Part shown: piece after piece, positions 1 through 17,334 of the stretch
Layout: each line of letters begins with the position of its first letter
Numbering within the stretch: the stretch's first letter is position 1
Translations under genes and position numbers: made by a program
The notes under the pieces: generated by a model
What the model was told of the DNA's origin: nothing
The model's input: only the letters and a program-made list of their open reading frames with translations
The model's database searches: none
Sequence record: NC_010152.1
Strand: one strand, 5' to 3'
Length of the DNA stretch: 39,577 nucleotides

Positions 1-81
1 AGCTTTTTTCTCTAGATAGAGAATGTAGTATCAAGTATCAAGATACAACATACAACGTAAAGTATCTGTGCAATACACGTA

Positions 82-7249: not shown

Positions 7250-7304
7250 GGTGAACTTGATCTTTGATCTTTATGAAGAGAAGAAGGGAAGCAAAAAAAG
7301 AAGA

Positions 7305-9081: not shown

Positions 9082-9570
9082 TTACCTGAAGTGTTTTAGA
9101 TCGTAGAGTTTGTAACATGCTAACTCGATTTCTCTGTCTCTGCATTCTTCTTTGTACATTTGTATTTTTACCGATAGCTTCTCTCTCCATAGATATTTTA
9201 GTAATTCCTTAATAAAAATTTCTTCCAGTTTCCAGTTTGTGTAGCAATGCTCTTCTTGGCACTTACATTCTTTAAAGATCATTTCTAGAAACATTTTGTT
9301 CTGTATAGTTTCTAATAATCGTAAATTGTAGTTCCAAAATTCAACGGTGAAATCAGTTACATGAAAGTCAAATTCTATTGTTTTTCTTTCTGCAAGTTTG
9401 TCGTCAATCCATAGATAATCCATCACTCTTACCGTTATTTCATTTCCATATTCTTTTGGTCTTCTTGGTATTGATATTGCGACTTCTTTTTCTAAGAATT
9501 TACCTTGCCACCCAGATAAAAAAATATTTGTCTCAAAATTATTTTTTGAAATTGAAGTTACATACCTCAT
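9082..9570 (-). CDS. Hypothetical protein (162 aa), anti-defence candidate
   Basis: Own promoter (CAAAAAGACTTATATATCC) and GGGGGA SD. Confidence 0.8.
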   Translation of the reverse strand: MRYVTSISKNNFETNIFLSGWQGKFLEKEVAISIPRRPKEYGNEITVRVMDYLWIDDKLAERKTIEFDFHVTDFTVEFWNYNLRLLETIQNKMFLEMIFKECKCQEEHCYTNWKLEEIFIKELLKYLWREKLSVKIQMYKEECRDREIELACYKLYDLKHFR

Positions 9571-9606
9571 AGTATCCCCCTTTTAATTATTATATTTTGG
9601 GAAAAT

Positions 9607-9626
9607 GGATATATAAGTCTTTTTGC
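9607..9626 (-). promoter_or_regulatory. Early-type promoter of ORF162
   Basis: GCAAAAAGACTTATATATCC. Confidence 0.8.
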
Positions 9627-9700
9627 GATACTTTACGCCGTTTTGCTTCTTATTATTGAGACTTTCTTCTTTTATAGTATTACTATGTAATTGTCTAATT

Positions 9701-9853
9701 ATGAGTCTAGAATATGAAATTCTAAAAGTTGAGTGTAAAGAGAAAAATTGCTTTGTAACCGTCAAACTAATAAGAAATGGTACAATAGAGATTTTCAATT
9801 CTGTACCAATTGAAAATATAAATAAACTGATAGAGAATTTCTCATTTTTTTAG
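9701..9853 (+). CDS. Small hypothetical protein (50 aa, MSLEYEIL...)
   Basis: Internal ATG of the tracked ORF 9623-9853, with TTTTATA ~25 nt upstream (leaderless). Confidence 0.5.
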   Translation: MSLEYEILKVECKEKNCFVTVKLIRNGTIEIFNSVPIENINKLIENFSFF

Positions 9854-9943
9854 TCGAAAAATAATTTTTGATTCTGTATAATACCAAATTGGTTTTCAAT
9901 TTCACTTTCTATGTGTGTAGGAAAAAGTTTACATTCACATTAT

Positions 9944-10270
9944 CAAAATTTTACTAGTTGAGCTTATACCTTATTAGTCTAGTTTACGCTTAGCATTTTT
10001 GAAATGTAGTTAATACCCGCATTTTTTATTTCAAGAAGAGAGATCAATTAACGTTTGTCTGCACAAAATTCTACTATCCTGATTTATACTTTACTAGTCA
10101 AGTTTAAATTGTAAACCAGGCGGGAAAGTCTTGTAATTGTCAAGTTTGAACTATAATAAAAGAATTGAGAGGATTAGGAAATTGTGAAGAAGAATGAAAA
10201 CAATTAACGTTTGTCCGCACAAAAATCTACTAGACTTACTTATACTTTACTATTCAGATATACGCTTAGC
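9944..10270 (+). repeat. Three degenerate direct repeats in a non-coding region
   Basis: 10045-10101 and 10201-10257 share CAATTAACGTTTGTC(T/C)GCACAAAA(T/A)TCTACTA...TTATACTTTACTA. 9944-9994 is a partial copy ending in TACGCTTAGC, as does 10261-10270. Confidence 0.85.
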
Positions 10271-10309
10271 TGATTTACAATTAATATAGAAATTTTATTA
10301 CAAAAATTT

Positions 10310-10390
10310 GAAAAATTACTTGAAAACTGAGAAAATACCCTAATTTGAGGCATCTTCTTACTCTAGAACAAAGTTTTCAAGTAATTTTTC
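10310..10390. repeat. Perfect 19-bp inverted repeat with a 43-bp spacer
   Basis: GAAAAATTACTTGAAAACT (10310-10328) and AGTTTTCAAGTAATTTTTC (10372-10390). Confidence 0.9.
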
Positions 10391-10900
10391 TATTGTATGT
10401 AATATATTTTGTAAAGTGTAATAAAGTGATCTTAATGTGGAGAAAAAGATATATAAGCTTATTATTCAATATGTATAATAGTGAAGGCTATGGAAGGGGA
10501 AAGTGTGATTCAGAGAATTGAGAAAACACATGAGATGGTAAAAAAACTAATAGAATTAGAGAGTCAACAGGAGGACATATGCATACAAATCTATCAAATG
10601 ATTGAACAATATGAGGATACGTTGTTACATGAAAAGGGAAGAGAAAAGTTTTTACAAATGAGAACTGAAATTCATAGTTTGTGTATGAATGCGCACAGGT
10701 CTCTGTTTCAATTAAAGCATGTATTTGCCGATTTGCTTTACGAAAGTTAATTCCCTTTTTTTTATTTGTTATTCATTCTTGATGAAGAGAATGGAACAGC
10801 ATGTATTATTTATAAATTATATAAGCAATTTTTCTATTGTATTTAATATATTTTGTAAAGTGCAATAAAGCGATCTAATTCTAGAGAAAAAGATATATAA
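10379..10900 (+). repeat. Duplicated 78-bp upstream/promoter block
   Basis: 10379-10456 versus 10823-10900: 70/78 identical, both ending in GAGAAAAAGATATATAA. Confidence 0.9.
10490..10750 (+). CDS. Helical hypothetical protein (86 aa), paralog A
   Basis: ATG chosen from the promoter and SD spacing; C-terminal CxxxxxxLFxL..VF.D.LY motif shared with the next ORF. Confidence 0.8.
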   Translation: MEGESVIQRIEKTHEMVKKLIELESQQEDICIQIYQMIEQYEDTLLHEKGREKFLQMRTEIHSLCMNAHRSLFQLKHVFADLLYES

Positions 10901-10933
10901 ATGTTTAAGGTAATATGTATAGTAGGGGAAAGT

Positions 10934-11188
10934 ATGGAAGAAGTAAATATATCTAAAAAAGTAACAATGGAAGAAACAAGAAAGCAATTGTTGAAAGAAC
11001 TTGAAGTATTAGAAAAGGTAAACGAAATTTTGAATAACATAGACAAAATAATGGCAGAGTTGGGCGATATATGCTATTCGGCAAGAGAATTAATGCCCCA
11101 GGTCAGAAAGGATCTAATAGGACAGTGTTCTGAGATTCAGAAAAAATTGTACAAACTGTATGACATAATTTCTGATACAGTATATTAA
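10934..11188 (+). CDS. Helical hypothetical protein (84 aa), paralog B
   Basis: ATG after AGGGGA; same upstream block as paralog A; QCSEIQKKLYKLYDIISDTVY. Confidence 0.8.
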   Translation: MEEVNISKKVTMEETRKQLLKELEVLEKVNEILNNIDKIMAELGDICYSARELMPQVRKDLIGQCSEIQKKLYKLYDIISDTVY

Positions 11189-11219
11189 AGTCAATTCTCT
11201 TTTTTTTATTCTTCTTTCG

Positions 11220-11349
11220 TTCTTGATGGAGAGAATTCTGAGTTATACTATAATTCATATATTATATATATGAATTATGTGTTTTCTCTTATTCTTGATG
11301 GAGAGAATGGTGTGGTATGCATTATACCTATATTATATATAGGTATAAT
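11220..11349 (+). repeat. Two 72-bp-spaced units, each a TTCTTGATGGAGAGAAT 17-mer plus a 13-bp-arm palindrome
   Basis: 17-mers at 11220-11236 and 11292-11308, with a 1-mismatch copy at 10776-10792. Palindromes at 11250-11278 and 11321-11349, both with a TAT loop. Confidence 0.85.
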
Positions 11350-11381
11350 AGTGTGTATAAAAAGTTCATATAAAAACAAAA

Positions 11382-13076
11382 TTATCTTGATTCGGAAATT
11401 ATTCCATTGTATTCCTTAAAAATGAAGTTGTATCTCTGTGAAAACTGTCTCTGAAATATCTGATGATCATAAGCAATATCCAGTATTATCCCTTTTTCTT
11501 TGTCTTTTGCAGGGCGCATTACTCTTCCTACTCTTTGCACTAGTTTTATTCTACTTTTTCCCTGAGATAGTAATACTATTAGGCGTAGATTTGGTATATC
11601 TAAACCTTCATCCGCTAATGATGTCGCTATTAACGTTTGAATCTTTCCGTTTTTCAGGTTTTCTATTTTTCTCATTCTCTCTTCTAATTTTGTCATTGAT
11701 GTAACAAAGTCTGATGATATTCCATTTTCATTGAGCATTTCTGATAATTTTTTGGCAGTTGATATTCTCCTTACAATTACTAGAGCAGGATATGCATTAA
11801 TTGATTTTATTTTCTGAATGATTTGCATATTTGTACCAGGAGAATTCTCAAATAATCTTAGCAATAATGAATAGTATTTCGCAAATTCCATTTTCTCTTT
11901 TTCTTTTTCTAATCTCTTTATTTTTTCTTTCAGTTTTTTCGGAATTTCTGGTATGAACGGAATATATTCTAGGGGCACTAAGTAATGATTTCTTACTAAT
12001 TCCTGATAATTAATGGAATAAGATATTCTTCCTAATAATCCATTAATTTCTAAATCTTTTCCATCCTCCCTGAAAGGAGTGGCAGTGAGTCCTAAACGTA
12101 TTGAACCTGGTGAATCTAACAACAAAGCTTTTATCGAATTGGCAGGTGTGTGATGTGCTTCATCAACTATTATCAGGTCCGCATTATTAACAATGTCTCT
12201 GAGTTCATTGTATTTATTACGCTTTTTCTGTGAGTAATAATAAGATATTGAGAGCGCTATCAAATTTGAATCCTTTTCTTTTTTCAGTTCATTTAGCTCT
12301 CCTGAAACTATTGCAAAGTTCAAATCTTCCTTTTTGGCAAATTGTTGAAATTGTTTTAGTAATGTCGTTGAATTTACTGCGTAAATAATTTTCGGATTTC
12401 TTTTATTCTTTAGCATTTCTAACGTTGCTAATATAGAAATCACAGATTTTCCCGCCCCTGTTGGCGCCTTTATTATTCCTTCACCAATTATATTAACATC
12501 ATTGATCCATGACTTTATCGAATTTATCTGATATTCTCTTAACTCAAAGTTTTTCAATGTGATATCATGATATTGTAAATTGGTAAAGGGTTGTAATCTT
12601 ATTTCGCTAATGTTTAGCAGTTTCCAGTACAATCCTCTATAAGTTGTGAAGTAATCGTAATGTTCCCAGGCTAGTAGTATCTCTTCTTCATTATATTCCC
12701 CTTTCTGATGGTCGAATTTCTTTAGTTTATATGATAACATTTTTTTGTATTTTTCTAAGTCATCGTAAACATAAATATAATTTCCTCTAATTTTCGCATA
12801 TATAATTTCTTTCTCACTGTTGGTATAAGGCAATAAGATTTTGTAAATTTCCTCATCTACATATTGTGACAGAAAGTCAGCAATTTTTCGTAATTCTTCT
12901 TTTGGTAACTTAGATATTTTGAACTCATTGAGGTACCAGACTCTATCTTCAGGACTGAAATCAGCGATAGATTTTACTGTCAAGAGATATTCTCTAAATT
13001 CGTCTTTCTGCAAATATCTTTTTGGTTTCGGGATCGCAATTTTATTATTTTGCTGAAACATATTATCCACACTCAT
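11382..13076 (-). CDS. SF2 helicase, XPB/Rad25(SSL2)-like (564 aa)
   Basis: LREYQ, APTGAGKS, DEAHH, LGLTATPFREDG, ADEGLDIP, QRVGRVMR. Confidence 0.95.
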   Translation of the reverse strand: MSVDNMFQQNNKIAIPKPKRYLQKDEFREYLLTVKSIADFSPEDRVWYLNEFKISKLPKEELRKIADFLSQYVDEEIYKILLPYTNSEKEIIYAKIRGNYIYVYDDLEKYKKMLSYKLKKFDHQKGEYNEEEILLAWEHYDYFTTYRGLYWKLLNISEIRLQPFTNLQYHDITLKNFELREYQINSIKSWINDVNIIGEGIIKAPTGAGKSVISILATLEMLKNKRNPKIIYAVNSTTLLKQFQQFAKKEDLNFAIVSGELNELKKEKDSNLIALSISYYYSQKKRNKYNELRDIVNNADLIIVDEAHHTPANSIKALLLDSPGSIRLGLTATPFREDGKDLEINGLLGRISYSINYQELVRNHYLVPLEYIPFIPEIPKKLKEKIKRLEKEKEKMEFAKYYSLLLRLFENSPGTNMQIIQKIKSINAYPALVIVRRISTAKKLSEMLNENGISSDFVTSMTKLEERMRKIENLKNGKIQTLIATSLADEGLDIPNLRLIVLLSQGKSRIKLVQRVGRVMRPAKDKEKGIILDIAYDHQIFQRQFSQRYNFIFKEYNGIISESR

Positions 13077-16974: not shown

Positions 16975-17334
16975 ATGGCGGAAGAGAAAAAAGAGGACGA
17001 AATTCTCTTACCAGAAGAGAATAAGAGTGAGACTGAGAAGATCGTGGAAAGCATTATCTCATCGATAGAAACTGATCTACCTTCGAACGTGGATTATGTA
17101 ACGGGAATATTAACTGACGAGGATAGGAACGTTCTCATCATCAAGAAGGGCAAAATATATGTTGGAAAGTCGCTCGAGGACGCAAAGCCGATAAAGGAAT
17201 ACATGAAGAATGCCGACGTTCCATTCTTAATAAATGCACTATACATCCTAAAGGACATGTTGCCGTCATATAAAGACATGTGGTCAGGGAAGCTCGAAGA
17301 GGAGGCTAGGAAAAAGTACAACGAGATATTCTGA
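16975..17334 (+). CDS. Hypothetical acidic protein (119 aa)
   Basis: TTTAAATA box ~25 nt upstream; typical composition. Confidence 0.75.
   Translation: MAEEKKEDEILLPEENKSETEKIVESIISSIETDLPSNVDYVTGILTDEDRNVLIIKKGKIYVGKSLEDAKPIKEYMKNADVPFLINALYILKDMLPSYKDMWSGKLEEEARKKYNEIF

What the first reader, a model, noticed from the sequence alone, without database searches (positions are those of the whole stretch)
10776..11349. Conserved 17-mer followed by sequence-divergent but structure-conserved palindromes
Seen in sequence: TTCTTGATG(A/G)AGAGAAT follows each paralog's terminator (10776, 11220) and recurs 72 bp later (11292). In the two distal copies it is followed after 12-13 nt by 13-bp-arm palindromes with a TAT loop whose arm sequences differ (ATAATTCATATAT versus ATTATACCTATAT). 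Divergent arms that stay complementary imply selection on the hairpin or cruciform. Inference: a recombination/attachment-like site for cassette gain and loss, a convergent-transcription terminator, or a small-RNA array.
Basis: seen in the sequence. Interest (0 to 1): 0.6.

Follow-up and report, generated by a model that had tools for sequence, protein, structure and literature searches.

The report
Conserved 17-bp boundary site in filamentous archaeal viruses
A 17-base sequence repeated three times in Acidianus filamentous virus 6 is kept almost letter for letter in many distantly related hot-spring viruses, always just behind transcription stop signals, and marks the exact point where neighbouring genes have been swapped between viruses; the eye-catching AT-rich palindromes next to it are a local extra, not the conserved part.

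Summary
The window is the AFV6 genome (Betalipothrixvirus). The 17-mer occurs exactly three times, against 0.04 expected. The two 13-bp-arm palindromes are the only perfect ones in the genome.

The 17-mer is the conserved part. AFV3, AFV7 and AFV8 keep two copies 72 bp apart. In 38 hot-spring metagenome contigs from divergent betalipothrixviruses the exact 17-mer lies in the 55-75 nt gap between two convergent genes, as T8, about 9 variable nt, the 17-mer, about 8 variable nt, A8. Homologous junctions fetched without using the motif show one-letter variants. Mosaic breakpoints between related contigs fall at the 17-mer edges. In natural AFV6-like populations, contigs also break and rejoin there.

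The palindromes are clade-specific. They are imperfect in relatives, show only weak covariation, and as hairpins would be marginal at 75-85 °C. The variable flanks are not complementary.

Not supported: a host CRISPR-repeat or dif mimic, an AvtR site, any Rfam family, a viral integrase.

Best reading, about 40%: a protein-recognised duplex-DNA boundary or operator site in a transcription-free gap, which also serves as the crossover point for module exchange. Rivals are a dedicated recombination site, a replication site, and an antisense RNA promoter.

The parts
10756..10763 (+). T8 run, the oligo-T terminator behind ORF89 (stop 10748-10750)
   Evidence: Read. The same T8 at 9-12 nt before the motif is seen in AFV3/7/8 and in 38 metagenome loci.
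10776..10792 (+). 17-mer copy A (TTCTTGATGAAGAGAAT)
   Evidence: Exact match. In natural populations contigs break and rejoin at 10792/10793.
10799..10826 (.). Imperfect AT-rich palindrome. It is the left half of a module-2-type palindrome, fused near 10823 to the 5' flank of the next cassette. It contains TTTATAAA and TTATATAA.
   Evidence: D4, I14; I3. It does not fold better than shuffles.
11200..11207 (+). T8 run, the oligo-T terminator behind ORF84b (stop 11186-11188)
   Evidence: It is conserved in AFV3/7/8, including AFV8, where the upstream gene is unrelated at DNA level.
11220..11236 (+). 17-mer copy 1 (TTCTTGATGGAGAGAAT)
   Evidence: Contig joints fall at 11236/11237.
11250..11278 (.). 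Perfect palindrome 1, with 13-bp arms and a TAT loop. The minus strand reads ATATATAA, the TATA of this genome's strong promoters.
11279..11291 (+). Pyrimidine-rich spacer before copy 2
11292..11308 (+). 17-mer copy 2 (TTCTTGATGGAGAGAAT). Position 11301 is G or A in natural variants.
11321..11349 (.). Perfect palindrome 2, with 13-bp arms and a TAT loop
11359..11381 (-). A-runs on the + strand, which read as oligo-T terminators on the minus strand behind the helicase gene ORF564 (stop 11382-11384). They close the transcription-free gap.
7267..7283 (+). A two-mismatch relative of the motif (ATCTTTATGAAGAGAAG). It lies between the T7 run behind ORF219 and the TATA box of ORF109 (both minus-strand genes).

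Best explanation
The functional unit is the 17-bp sequence, read as duplex DNA by a sequence-specific protein that has not been identified. It could be a viral or a host regulator.

The site lies in the short stretch that transcription should not reach, just past the oligo-T terminator of a gene and usually between two convergent genes. There it would act as a boundary or operator site: an auxiliary operator, or a roadblock that stops read-through.

It is the only sequence shared by otherwise diverged neighbours, so homology-driven crossovers land in it. That would explain three things:
- gene modules on its two sides assort independently between viruses;
- AFV6 carries a 444-bp cassette duplication ending in the motif;
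- the AFV3/6/7/8 clade carries a 72-bp repeat of motif plus palindrome.

The AT-rich palindromes are a clade-specific accessory made of TATA-box-like sequence. If they are recognised at all, it is as duplex dyads rather than as hairpins.

Shown: the conservation, the position, the breakpoints and the weak hairpin evidence. Inferred: protein binding and the boundary or operator role.
For: 1. Conservation against variable flanks.
- Four isolates keep the motif, with one R position varying, while the adjacent 12-13 nt spacers are almost unalignable.
- 38 metagenome loci from viruses whose helicase is about 64% identical to AFV6 carry the exact 17-mer. They have 30 different flank pairs and at least 24 flank clusters at under 85% identity.
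- Junctions fetched through the neighbouring protein, not through the motif, show single-letter variants: four with TTCTCGATGAAGAGAAT and one with TTCTTGATAAAGAGAAT.
- In natural AFV6-like populations, the best-supported changes listed inside the three copies reduce to one position, 11301 G>A. Positions just outside vary: 10768-10775, 10794, 10799 and 11309-11316.

2. Position.
- In all 33 metagenome loci with enough sequence, a convergent ORF ends 19-30 nt before the motif and another ends 18-27 nt after it, as T8...17-mer...A8.
- AFV6 shows the same logic: T8 at 11200-11207 on one side and the helicase terminators at 11359-11381 on the other.

3. A DNA-level site, not an RNA structure.
- The variable flanks are not complementary beyond chance, perm p = 0.32.
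- The motif region itself folds no better than shuffles.

4. Operator-like relatives.
- The family YTCTTKATRAAGAGAAW gives 89 unique hits at up to 2 mismatches in the related contigs, against 2 for the reversed control.
- 65 hits are intergenic and many lie 2-8 nt from strong TATA boxes.
- Some have a clean dyad, TTCTCTT/AAGAGAA.

5. Crossovers.
- Pairs such as L102/L113 and L100/L112 are 100% identical up to the motif and diverge right after it. L095/L112, L096/L135 and L103/L126 do the reverse.
- Contig joints at 10792/3 and 11236/7 lead into other spacers or straight into another cassette's promoter.
Against: - No binding protein is identified and no experiment exists.
- The motif's dyad symmetry is poor (TTCT/AGAA only), which is unusual for a dimeric regulator.
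- In the longest related contig stretch examined (20 kb of L147) the motif sits at only one of the convergent junctions. Other convergent junctions manage with a bare T7A8. It is therefore not a general terminator part.
- Near-invariance of all 17 positions is stricter than most operators, although the exact-match search inflates this.
- The distance between family members and TATA boxes varies from 2 to 22 nt.
- Crossovers landing precisely at a 17-bp site could also mean a dedicated recombinase.
Confidence: 0.4

Rival explanations
1. A dedicated site-specific recombination site. A host recombinase, or an unrecognised viral one, cuts and rejoins at the 17-mer, moving the flanking genes as cassettes in an integron-like way. 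In the AFV clade the palindromes would be accessory or core-type dyads.
For: - Mosaic switches fall within a few bases of the motif edges in at least five independent contig pairs, and left and right flanks assort freely.
- In the metagenome clade the ~207-aa gene is flanked by same-orientation copies, one abutting its TATA box and one behind its T8. In AFV6, ORF84b is flanked by copies 444 bp apart.
- The AFV6 duplication joint lies near the centre of a palindrome, about 10823.
- Palindromes with 11-13 bp arms and a 3-7 bp centre have the layout of tyrosine-recombinase core sites (general knowledge).
Against: - AFV6 has no tyrosine recombinase (PF00589) and no Hjc-type resolvase (PF01870).
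- The 17-mer itself lacks the inverted arms such enzymes need.
- No counterpart of the palindromes was found in 256 host-order genomes.
- The motif was not found in 301 host-order genomes at up to 2 mismatches above control level.
- Short conserved islands between diverged modules attract ordinary homologous crossovers anyway.
Confidence: 0.2
2. A replication or genome-maintenance site: an origin, a terminus, or a resolution or packaging signal. It would be bound by a core viral protein such as the adjacent SF2 helicase. The T8/A8 runs or the AT-rich palindromes would serve as the easily melted part.
For: - There is one locus in the 20 kb examined of the near-complete 39-kb contig L147.
- It is shielded from transcription on both sides.
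- It is flanked by very AT-rich sequence.
- In the AFV clade it lies directly behind the helicase gene, and in the metagenome clade within 1-1.5 kb of helicase/ORF338.
- A motif relative lies in the outermost known part of the terminal repeat, at 8-24.
Against: - Cumulative GC skew shows no turning point there.
- SIFV, SIFV2 and AFV9 have the same core genes but no motif within 5 kb of the helicase.
- Convergent transcription is not typical of origins.
- Degenerate relatives at many promoters point to transcription instead.
Confidence: 0.12
3. A promoter unit for short antisense RNAs. The palindromes are bidirectional TATA boxes, and the minus-strand RNA starts at the first A of the reverse-complemented 17-mer, antisense to the 3' end of the upstream small gene.
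For: - On the minus strand, ATATATAA starts at 11340 and 11269, and TTATATAA at 10822. ATATATAA is the TATA of this genome's strong promoters. Each lies 30-33 nt before the C-A step that opens the reverse-complemented motif (11308, 11239/11236, 10792). This spacing is typical of Sulfolobales promoters (general knowledge).
- The geometry recurs in all three AFV6 modules.
Against: - No purine-rich BRE precedes these TATA-like boxes.
- The orientation of the asymmetric centre flips between relatives, TAT versus ATA.
- The wider clade keeps the motif without any palindrome.
- There is no Rfam hit.
- No RNA run holds the region.
Confidence: 0.1
4. The palindromes are hairpin-type bidirectional terminators or cruciforms under selection for pairing.
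For: - They are perfect in AFV6 and far beyond chance.
- Three pairs change on both sides across eight copies. The covariation score is 0.162 against 0.098, reached by 15 of 500 shuffles.
- Palindrome 1 is followed by a T-rich stretch.
Against: - Eight broken cells in relatives, and one pair unpaired in 4 of 8 copies.
- The stems are almost pure A-T. The full hairpin is +0.4 to -0.8 kcal/mol at 75 °C and positive at 85 °C.
- The strong T8 lies before the element.
- Archaeal termination needs only oligo-T (general knowledge).
- The palindromes are absent from the wider clade.
Confidence: 0.05
5. A neutral relic: the copies are only leftovers of recent tandem duplications.
For: A 444-bp tandem duplication and a 72-bp repeat are evident.
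Against: The motif is kept in viruses whose neighbouring genes and flanks are unalignable.
Confidence: 0.03

Closest known systems
Module-boundary ('linker') sequences of mosaic tailed phages (modular theory of phage evolution)
   Same: A short conserved intergenic sequence lies between diverged gene modules. Mosaic joints fall in it, and duplications and swaps of neighbouring genes follow.
   Different: This is an archaeal filamentous virus. The conserved part is a near-invariant 17 bp placed between convergent oligo-T terminators. It has not been described for these viruses: no paper in the library prints the motif.
Conserved regulatory sequences around the strong BRE/TATA promoter of early and anti-defence genes in archaeal viruses, and Aca-type operators (Bhoobalan-Chitty et al. 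2024, PMC11065993)
   Same: It lies in the same genome neighbourhood: AFV6 gp14, gp16, gp17 and gp18 are listed there as anti-defence genes. That work also describes virus-specific conserved DNA next to a strong promoter. Relatives of the 17-mer abut TATA boxes in related contigs.
   Different: The three AFV6 copies lie behind terminators, not within 100 nt upstream of a start codon. ORF89 and ORF84b (gp22, gp23) are not in that paper's lists. No regulator is assigned.
Integron attC sites
   Same: They lie at the 3' end of each cassette, have palindromic arms that differ between copies, and are linked to cassette gain and loss.
   Different: AFV6 has no integrase. The cassettes have their own promoters. 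The conserved part is the non-palindromic 17-mer. The arms are not reliably complementary in relatives.
Sequence-specific roadblock terminators between convergent units (mTERF/DmTTF in mitochondria, Reb1 in yeast)
   Same: A conserved protein-type site sits exactly where two transcription units meet head-on.
   Different: No protein is known. Strong oligo-T runs already precede the site. Other convergent junctions in the same viruses lack it.
AvtR/SvtR ribbon-helix-helix operators of archaeal viruses (reviewed in PMC5569661)
   Same: A viral regulator with several conserved sites in betalipothrixvirus genomes, AFV6 being the model.
   Different: The published AvtR consensus ATnnTnnTAnnACnTT has no match at up to 1 mismatch anywhere in 10700-11400.

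Membership tests
Bacterial-type intrinsic (hairpin plus U-tract) terminator | A stable GC-rich stem directly followed by a U-run | tested here: not met
   The stems are 12 of 13 A-T pairs. The T8 runs lie before the motif and palindromes. Hairpin energy is about 0 at 75 °C.
Archaeal oligo-T terminator | A run of 5 or more T shortly after the stop codon on the sense strand | tested here: met
   T8 at 10756-10763 and 11200-11207, and A5 runs at 11359-11376 for the minus-strand helicase. This applies to the flanks, not to the 17-mer itself. No 3'-end data exist.
CRISPR repeat, mini-array or solitary repeat unit (RNA anti-CRISPR) | Near-identity to a host CRISPR repeat, and array-like spacing in host genomes | tested here: not met
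   No species genome holds two copies 30-60 nt apart. In 301 host-order genomes there are only scattered hits at up to 2 mismatches, near control level. There is no CRISPR-DR hit in Rfam. The 3' handle-like part varies while the core is fixed.
Integron attC / tyrosine-recombinase core site | A cognate integrase gene in the element | tested here: not met
   PF00589 has no match in the complete AFV6 record, while the control rings in 14 of 14 genomes.
Integron attC / tyrosine-recombinase core site | Pairing of the arms kept despite sequence change | tested here: inconclusive
   92% of cells paired against 88% in shuffles. Three pairs have double-sided change and 8 cells are broken, in 8 copies from 4 genomes.
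Xer/dif-type site borrowed from the host | A matching single-copy dyad in host chromosomes | tested here: not met
   A degenerate palindrome pattern at up to 3 mismatches matches 6 of 256 host-order genomes. The matches are unrelated sequences, against 2 control hits. The Sulfolobales dif sequence itself could not be read from the paper.
AvtR operator | A match to ATnnTnnTAnnACnTT | tested here: not met
   Of 46 genome-wide matches at up to 1 mismatch, none lies in 9211-12555.
Archaeal BRE/TATA promoter | A TATA box with an adjacent purine-rich BRE about 26-30 nt before a start site | tested here: inconclusive
   ATATATAA or TTATATAA is present on the minus strand at the right distance from the motif, but there is no purine-rich BRE. 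No TSS data exist.
Box C/D sRNA or K-turn | C box RUGAUGA and D box CUGA with guide spacing, conserved | tested here: not met
   UGAUGA occurs only in the A variant. CUGA follows only in module 1 of three genomes, at 8 nt. There is no significant Rfam hit.
Any curated RNA family (Rfam 15) | A score at or near the gathering threshold | tested here: not met
   The best hit is 22.6 bits against a threshold of 80, E = 1.

The most novel reading that the evidence does not exclude
Betalipothrixviruses run an integron-like cassette exchange. The 17-bp site would be the crossover core for a host-encoded or still unrecognised viral recombinase, shuffling small accessory (possibly anti-defence) genes between co-infecting viruses at single-site precision.
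Probability: 0.15. Interest if true: 0.8.

Novelty: new variant of a known kind. Interest (0 to 1): 0.5.

Why it matters
Almost nothing is known about the cis-acting DNA signals of lipothrixviruses. Their origins, packaging signals and most operators are unmapped.

This 17-bp site is kept across viruses that share only about 64% helicase identity. It lies in a transcription-free gap and coincides with mosaic joints. That makes it a concrete handle in three ways:
- it can be used as bait to fish out its binding protein;
- it can serve as a marker to find and align the variable accessory-gene region in metagenomes;
- it can act as a test bed for how archaeal viruses exchange gene modules next to their anti-defence islands.

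The work also corrects the emphasis. The striking palindromes are probably secondary.

Tried and rejected
- **CRISPR-repeat mimic.** The minus strand reads ...CATCAAGAAYGAAAG, which recalls the ...GAATTGAAAG repeat ends of Sulfolobales. No array-like pair exists in 185,579 species genomes. There is no enrichment in 301 host-order genomes. The handle-like end varies between copies.
- **AvtR site.** No match.
- **Rfam.** Nothing.
- **Long hairpin T8-flank-motif-flank-A8.** The flanks are not complementary beyond chance, p = 0.32. Only T8/A8 pair.
- **Coding or read-through.** The frame after the ORF84b TAA stays open for 77 codons in AFV6, with both 17-mers in frame. Stops occur in AFV3 and AFV8, and the spacers evolve unlike codons (read by eye).
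- **A8 plus TATTATAA as the promoter of a downstream gene in the metagenome clade.** Wrong: the downstream gene is convergent and this sequence holds its stop codon.
- **Host dif-like dyad.** Not found.
- **Viral integrase or Hjc.** None.
- **SIFV, SIFV2, AFV9.** No motif within 5 kb of the helicase.
- **IMG/VR.** Only AFV3/7/8 carry two copies. Two further single hits (L032, L047) show an A-run downstream; they are the same unrelated sequence, without the upstream T-run, and were not studied further. None of the remaining single hits has a T- or A-run beside the motif.
- **Papers.** The original AFV comparative-genomics paper and the AvtR paper are not held. No held paper prints the motif.
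- **GC skew.** No turning point at the site.
- **RNA evidence.** No RNA run holds the region.
- **Not attempted.** No protein-protein complex job was sent, because no protein partner is proposed.

Full report
**Identity of the window.** The 39,577 bases are the genome record of Acidianus filamentous virus 6 (Betalipothrixvirus pozzuoliense, AM087121/NC_010152), matched at 100% identity over the query. The finding lies between ORF84b (10934-11188, +) and the SF2 helicase ORF564 (11382-13076, -), with ORF89 (10481-10750, +) upstream. The region borders genes that a published screen lists as anti-defence genes: gp14, gp16 (AcrIII-1), gp17 (AcrIIIB1) and gp18. ORF89 and ORF84b (gp22, gp23) are not in those lists (PMC11065993).

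**Observation.** TTCTTGATGRAGAGAAT occurs exactly at 10776, 11220 and 11292. Shuffles give 0.04 matches even at 2 mismatches. Copies 1 and 2 each follow a stop codon and a T8 run.
- Copies 2 and 3 are followed, after 13 and 12 nt, by perfect palindromes with 13-bp arms (11250-11278 and 11321-11349).
- These are the only such palindromes in the genome. Markov simulations give 0.002 per 701 nt. Their DNA-hairpin z-scores are about -5.
- The region is a 444-bp tandem duplication (10370-10813 against 10814-11257) plus a 72-bp repeat of motif and palindrome.
- Copy 1 keeps only the left half of a palindrome. Homology to module 2 ends near 10823, where the 5' flank of the next cassette begins (D4).

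**Close relatives.** AFV3, AFV7 and AFV8 each keep two 17-mers 72 bp apart at the same place.
- In the four-genome alignment the motif is invariant except for the R position. The 12-13 nt spacers behind it are nearly unalignable.
- AFV8 has a different gene (ORF88) upstream, yet homology resumes at its stop codon.
- The palindromes are imperfect in the relatives. On an alignment of all eight copies, 92.3% of cells pair, against 87.7% in shuffles (26 of 500 shuffles reach this).
- Three pairs change on both sides, but eight cells are broken and one pair is unpaired in half the copies.
- With nearest-neighbour parameters, the full hairpins are about 0 kcal/mol at 75 °C and positive at 85 °C, which is the host's growth range from general knowledge.
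- Selection on a hairpin is therefore weakly supported at best.

**Wider relatives.** A metagenome scan for a T-run followed by the motif returned 49 loci. Eleven lack the context and are chance hits. The other 38 are betalipothrixvirus-like: helicase about 64% identical and ORF338 about 29% identical to AFV6.
- In every locus the layout is T8, 9-11 variable nt, the 17-mer, 8-9 variable nt, A8.
- In all 33 loci with enough sequence, the motif sits in a 55-75 nt gap between a ~145-aa ORF on the motif strand and a convergent ~207-220-aa ORF.
- The A8 was not part of the search pattern.
- The flanks fall into 30 distinct pairs and at least 24 clusters per side at 85% identity.
- They are no more complementary in cognate than in non-cognate combinations, p = 0.32. 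There is no extended hairpin.

**Unbiased sample.** The scan required an exact motif, so I also fetched junctions through homologues of the ~207-aa protein.
- Four loci carry TTCTCGATGAAGAGAAT and one carries TTCTTGATAAAGAGAAT.
- One has a diverged core.
- In four loci the neighbouring gene is co-directional and the motif is absent. The next convergent junction there is a bare T7A8.
- In the 20 kb examined of the near-complete 39-kb contig L147, the motif sits at only one of the convergent junctions.
- SIFV, SIFV2 and AFV9 lack the motif within 5 kb of the helicase.

**Motif family.** In the related contigs the degenerate form YTCTTKATRAAGAGAAW gives 89 unique hits at up to 2 mismatches, against 2 for the reversed control. 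Sixty-five are intergenic.
- Many lie 2-8 nt from strong TATA boxes, and some have a clean TTCTCTT/AAGAGAA dyad.
- In one lineage the ~207-aa gene has one copy abutting its TATA box and the exact copy behind its T8.
- AFV6 itself has a two-mismatch relative at 7267-7283, between the T7 run behind ORF219 and the ORF109 promoter. It also has weaker look-alikes just upstream of the ORF89 and ORF113 TATA boxes.

**Recombination.** Pairs of metagenome contigs switch between identity and divergence at the motif.
- L102/L113 and L100/L112 are 100% identical on the left up to the motif and diverge from the first bases after it.
- L095/L112, L096/L135 and L103/L126 show the mirror image.
- Four hot-spring metagenome runs from one study hold AFV6-like variants. 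Laid on 10300-11500, their contigs break or rejoin at 10792/3 and 11236/7.
- The joints lead to other spacers, to a single-module form, or to another cassette's promoter after 19 other letters.
- Among the best-supported differences listed, the only one inside a motif copy is 11301 G>A. Positions just outside the copies vary.

**Ideas tested and dropped.**
- *Host CRISPR repeat or solitary repeat unit.* No array-like pair in any species genome and no enrichment in 301 host-order genomes.
- *AvtR operator.* No match.
- *Rfam families.* No meaningful hit.
- *Host dif-like dyad.* Not found in 256 genomes.
- *Viral integrase or Hjc.* None.
- *Coding or read-through.* The frame is open in AFV6 only by the look of it, with stops in AFV3 and AFV8.
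- *Replication skew signal.* None.
- *Literature.* No held paper prints the motif. The original AFV genomics and AvtR papers are not held.

**Interpretation.** The conserved, probably functional element is the 17-mer, read as duplex DNA in a gap shielded from transcription on both sides by oligo-T runs.
- Its promoter-associated, dyad-like relatives point to a sequence-specific DNA-binding protein, most simply a transcription regulator. The exact copies would then be boundary or auxiliary sites.
- As the only shared sequence between diverged neighbours, it is where crossovers land. That accounts for the mosaics, the AFV6 cassette duplication and the 72-bp repeat.
- I put this at about 0.4.
- The rivals are a dedicated recombination site (0.2), a replication or maintenance site (0.12), an antisense-RNA promoter unit built on the TATA-like palindromes (0.1), hairpin terminators (0.05) and a neutral relic (0.03).
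- The data cannot separate them. Binding assays, end-mapping RNA-seq and replication mapping would.

**Limits.**
- The exact-match scan overstates invariance.
- The unbiased sample is small (eleven loci).
- Metagenome pieces are contigs, not reads.
- Thermodynamic values at 75-85 °C are extrapolations.
- Host genomes searched are a sample of species representatives and may not include Acidianus convivator.

Noticed in passing
window 9701-9853 (+): A conserved 50-aa gene (PHROG 17461) is not annotated in AFV6, where ORF71a is called on the opposite strand instead. Its product is 85-91% identical in AFV3/7/8. It is about 60-65% identical in SIFV, SIFV2, AFV9 (unannotated there too) and in most of the metagenome contigs. 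It always lies near the variable region.
   Followed up: partly
window 9920-10260: Three direct repeats of about 70 bp (for example 10040-10100 and 10196-10256, 85% identical) lie in a gene-free stretch. AFV7 has them. AFV3 and AFV8 have a shorter, different sequence, so this is a roughly 330-bp indel between close relatives.
   Followed up: no
window 10287-10328 / 10372-10413: A 42-nt inverted repeat, 83% complementary with a 43-nt loop, lies just upstream of the first cassette's promoter. The same region is present in AFV3/7/8, but not all changes are compensated.
   Followed up: no
window 8-24: The outermost known part of the left terminal repeat holds TTCTCTAGATAGAGAAT, preceded by a T-run. 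It is a dyad relative of the 17-mer. The AFV8 right end begins inside the same sequence. The other records stop short of it.
   Followed up: partly
window 11189-11419 (+): The reading frame stays open for 77 codons after the ORF84b TAA, in 24% GC sequence, with both 17-mers in frame (the 72-bp period is 24 codons). It is also open in AFV7 but closed in AFV3 and AFV8, so it is probably chance.
   Followed up: partly
L002 2296-2345, L003 2268-2320, L004 1890-1940: Upstream of the 50-aa gene, AFV3/7/8 have a strong TATA box followed at once by a GC-containing hairpin (CCCTCTC...GAGAGGG) and a T-run. This looks like a promoter-proximal terminator or a tiny RNA. AFV6 lacks it.
   Followed up: no
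L095 4777-6468 and L112, helicase gene: In the metagenome relatives the DEAH-box codons of the helicase read TTCTTGATGAAGCACAT. The first 12 letters are the same as those of the 17-mer. This is a trap for motif searches and probably a coincidence.
   Followed up: no
window 17131-17147 (-): A two-mismatch inverted copy of the motif (TTCTTGATGATGAGAAC) lies inside ORF119. It was not checked in relatives.
   Followed up: no
L155 1833-1864, L156, L157, L152: Some betalipothrixvirus convergent junctions consist of nothing but T7-8 directly abutting A7-8. This is a minimal two-way oligo-T terminator of about 30 nt.
   Followed up: no
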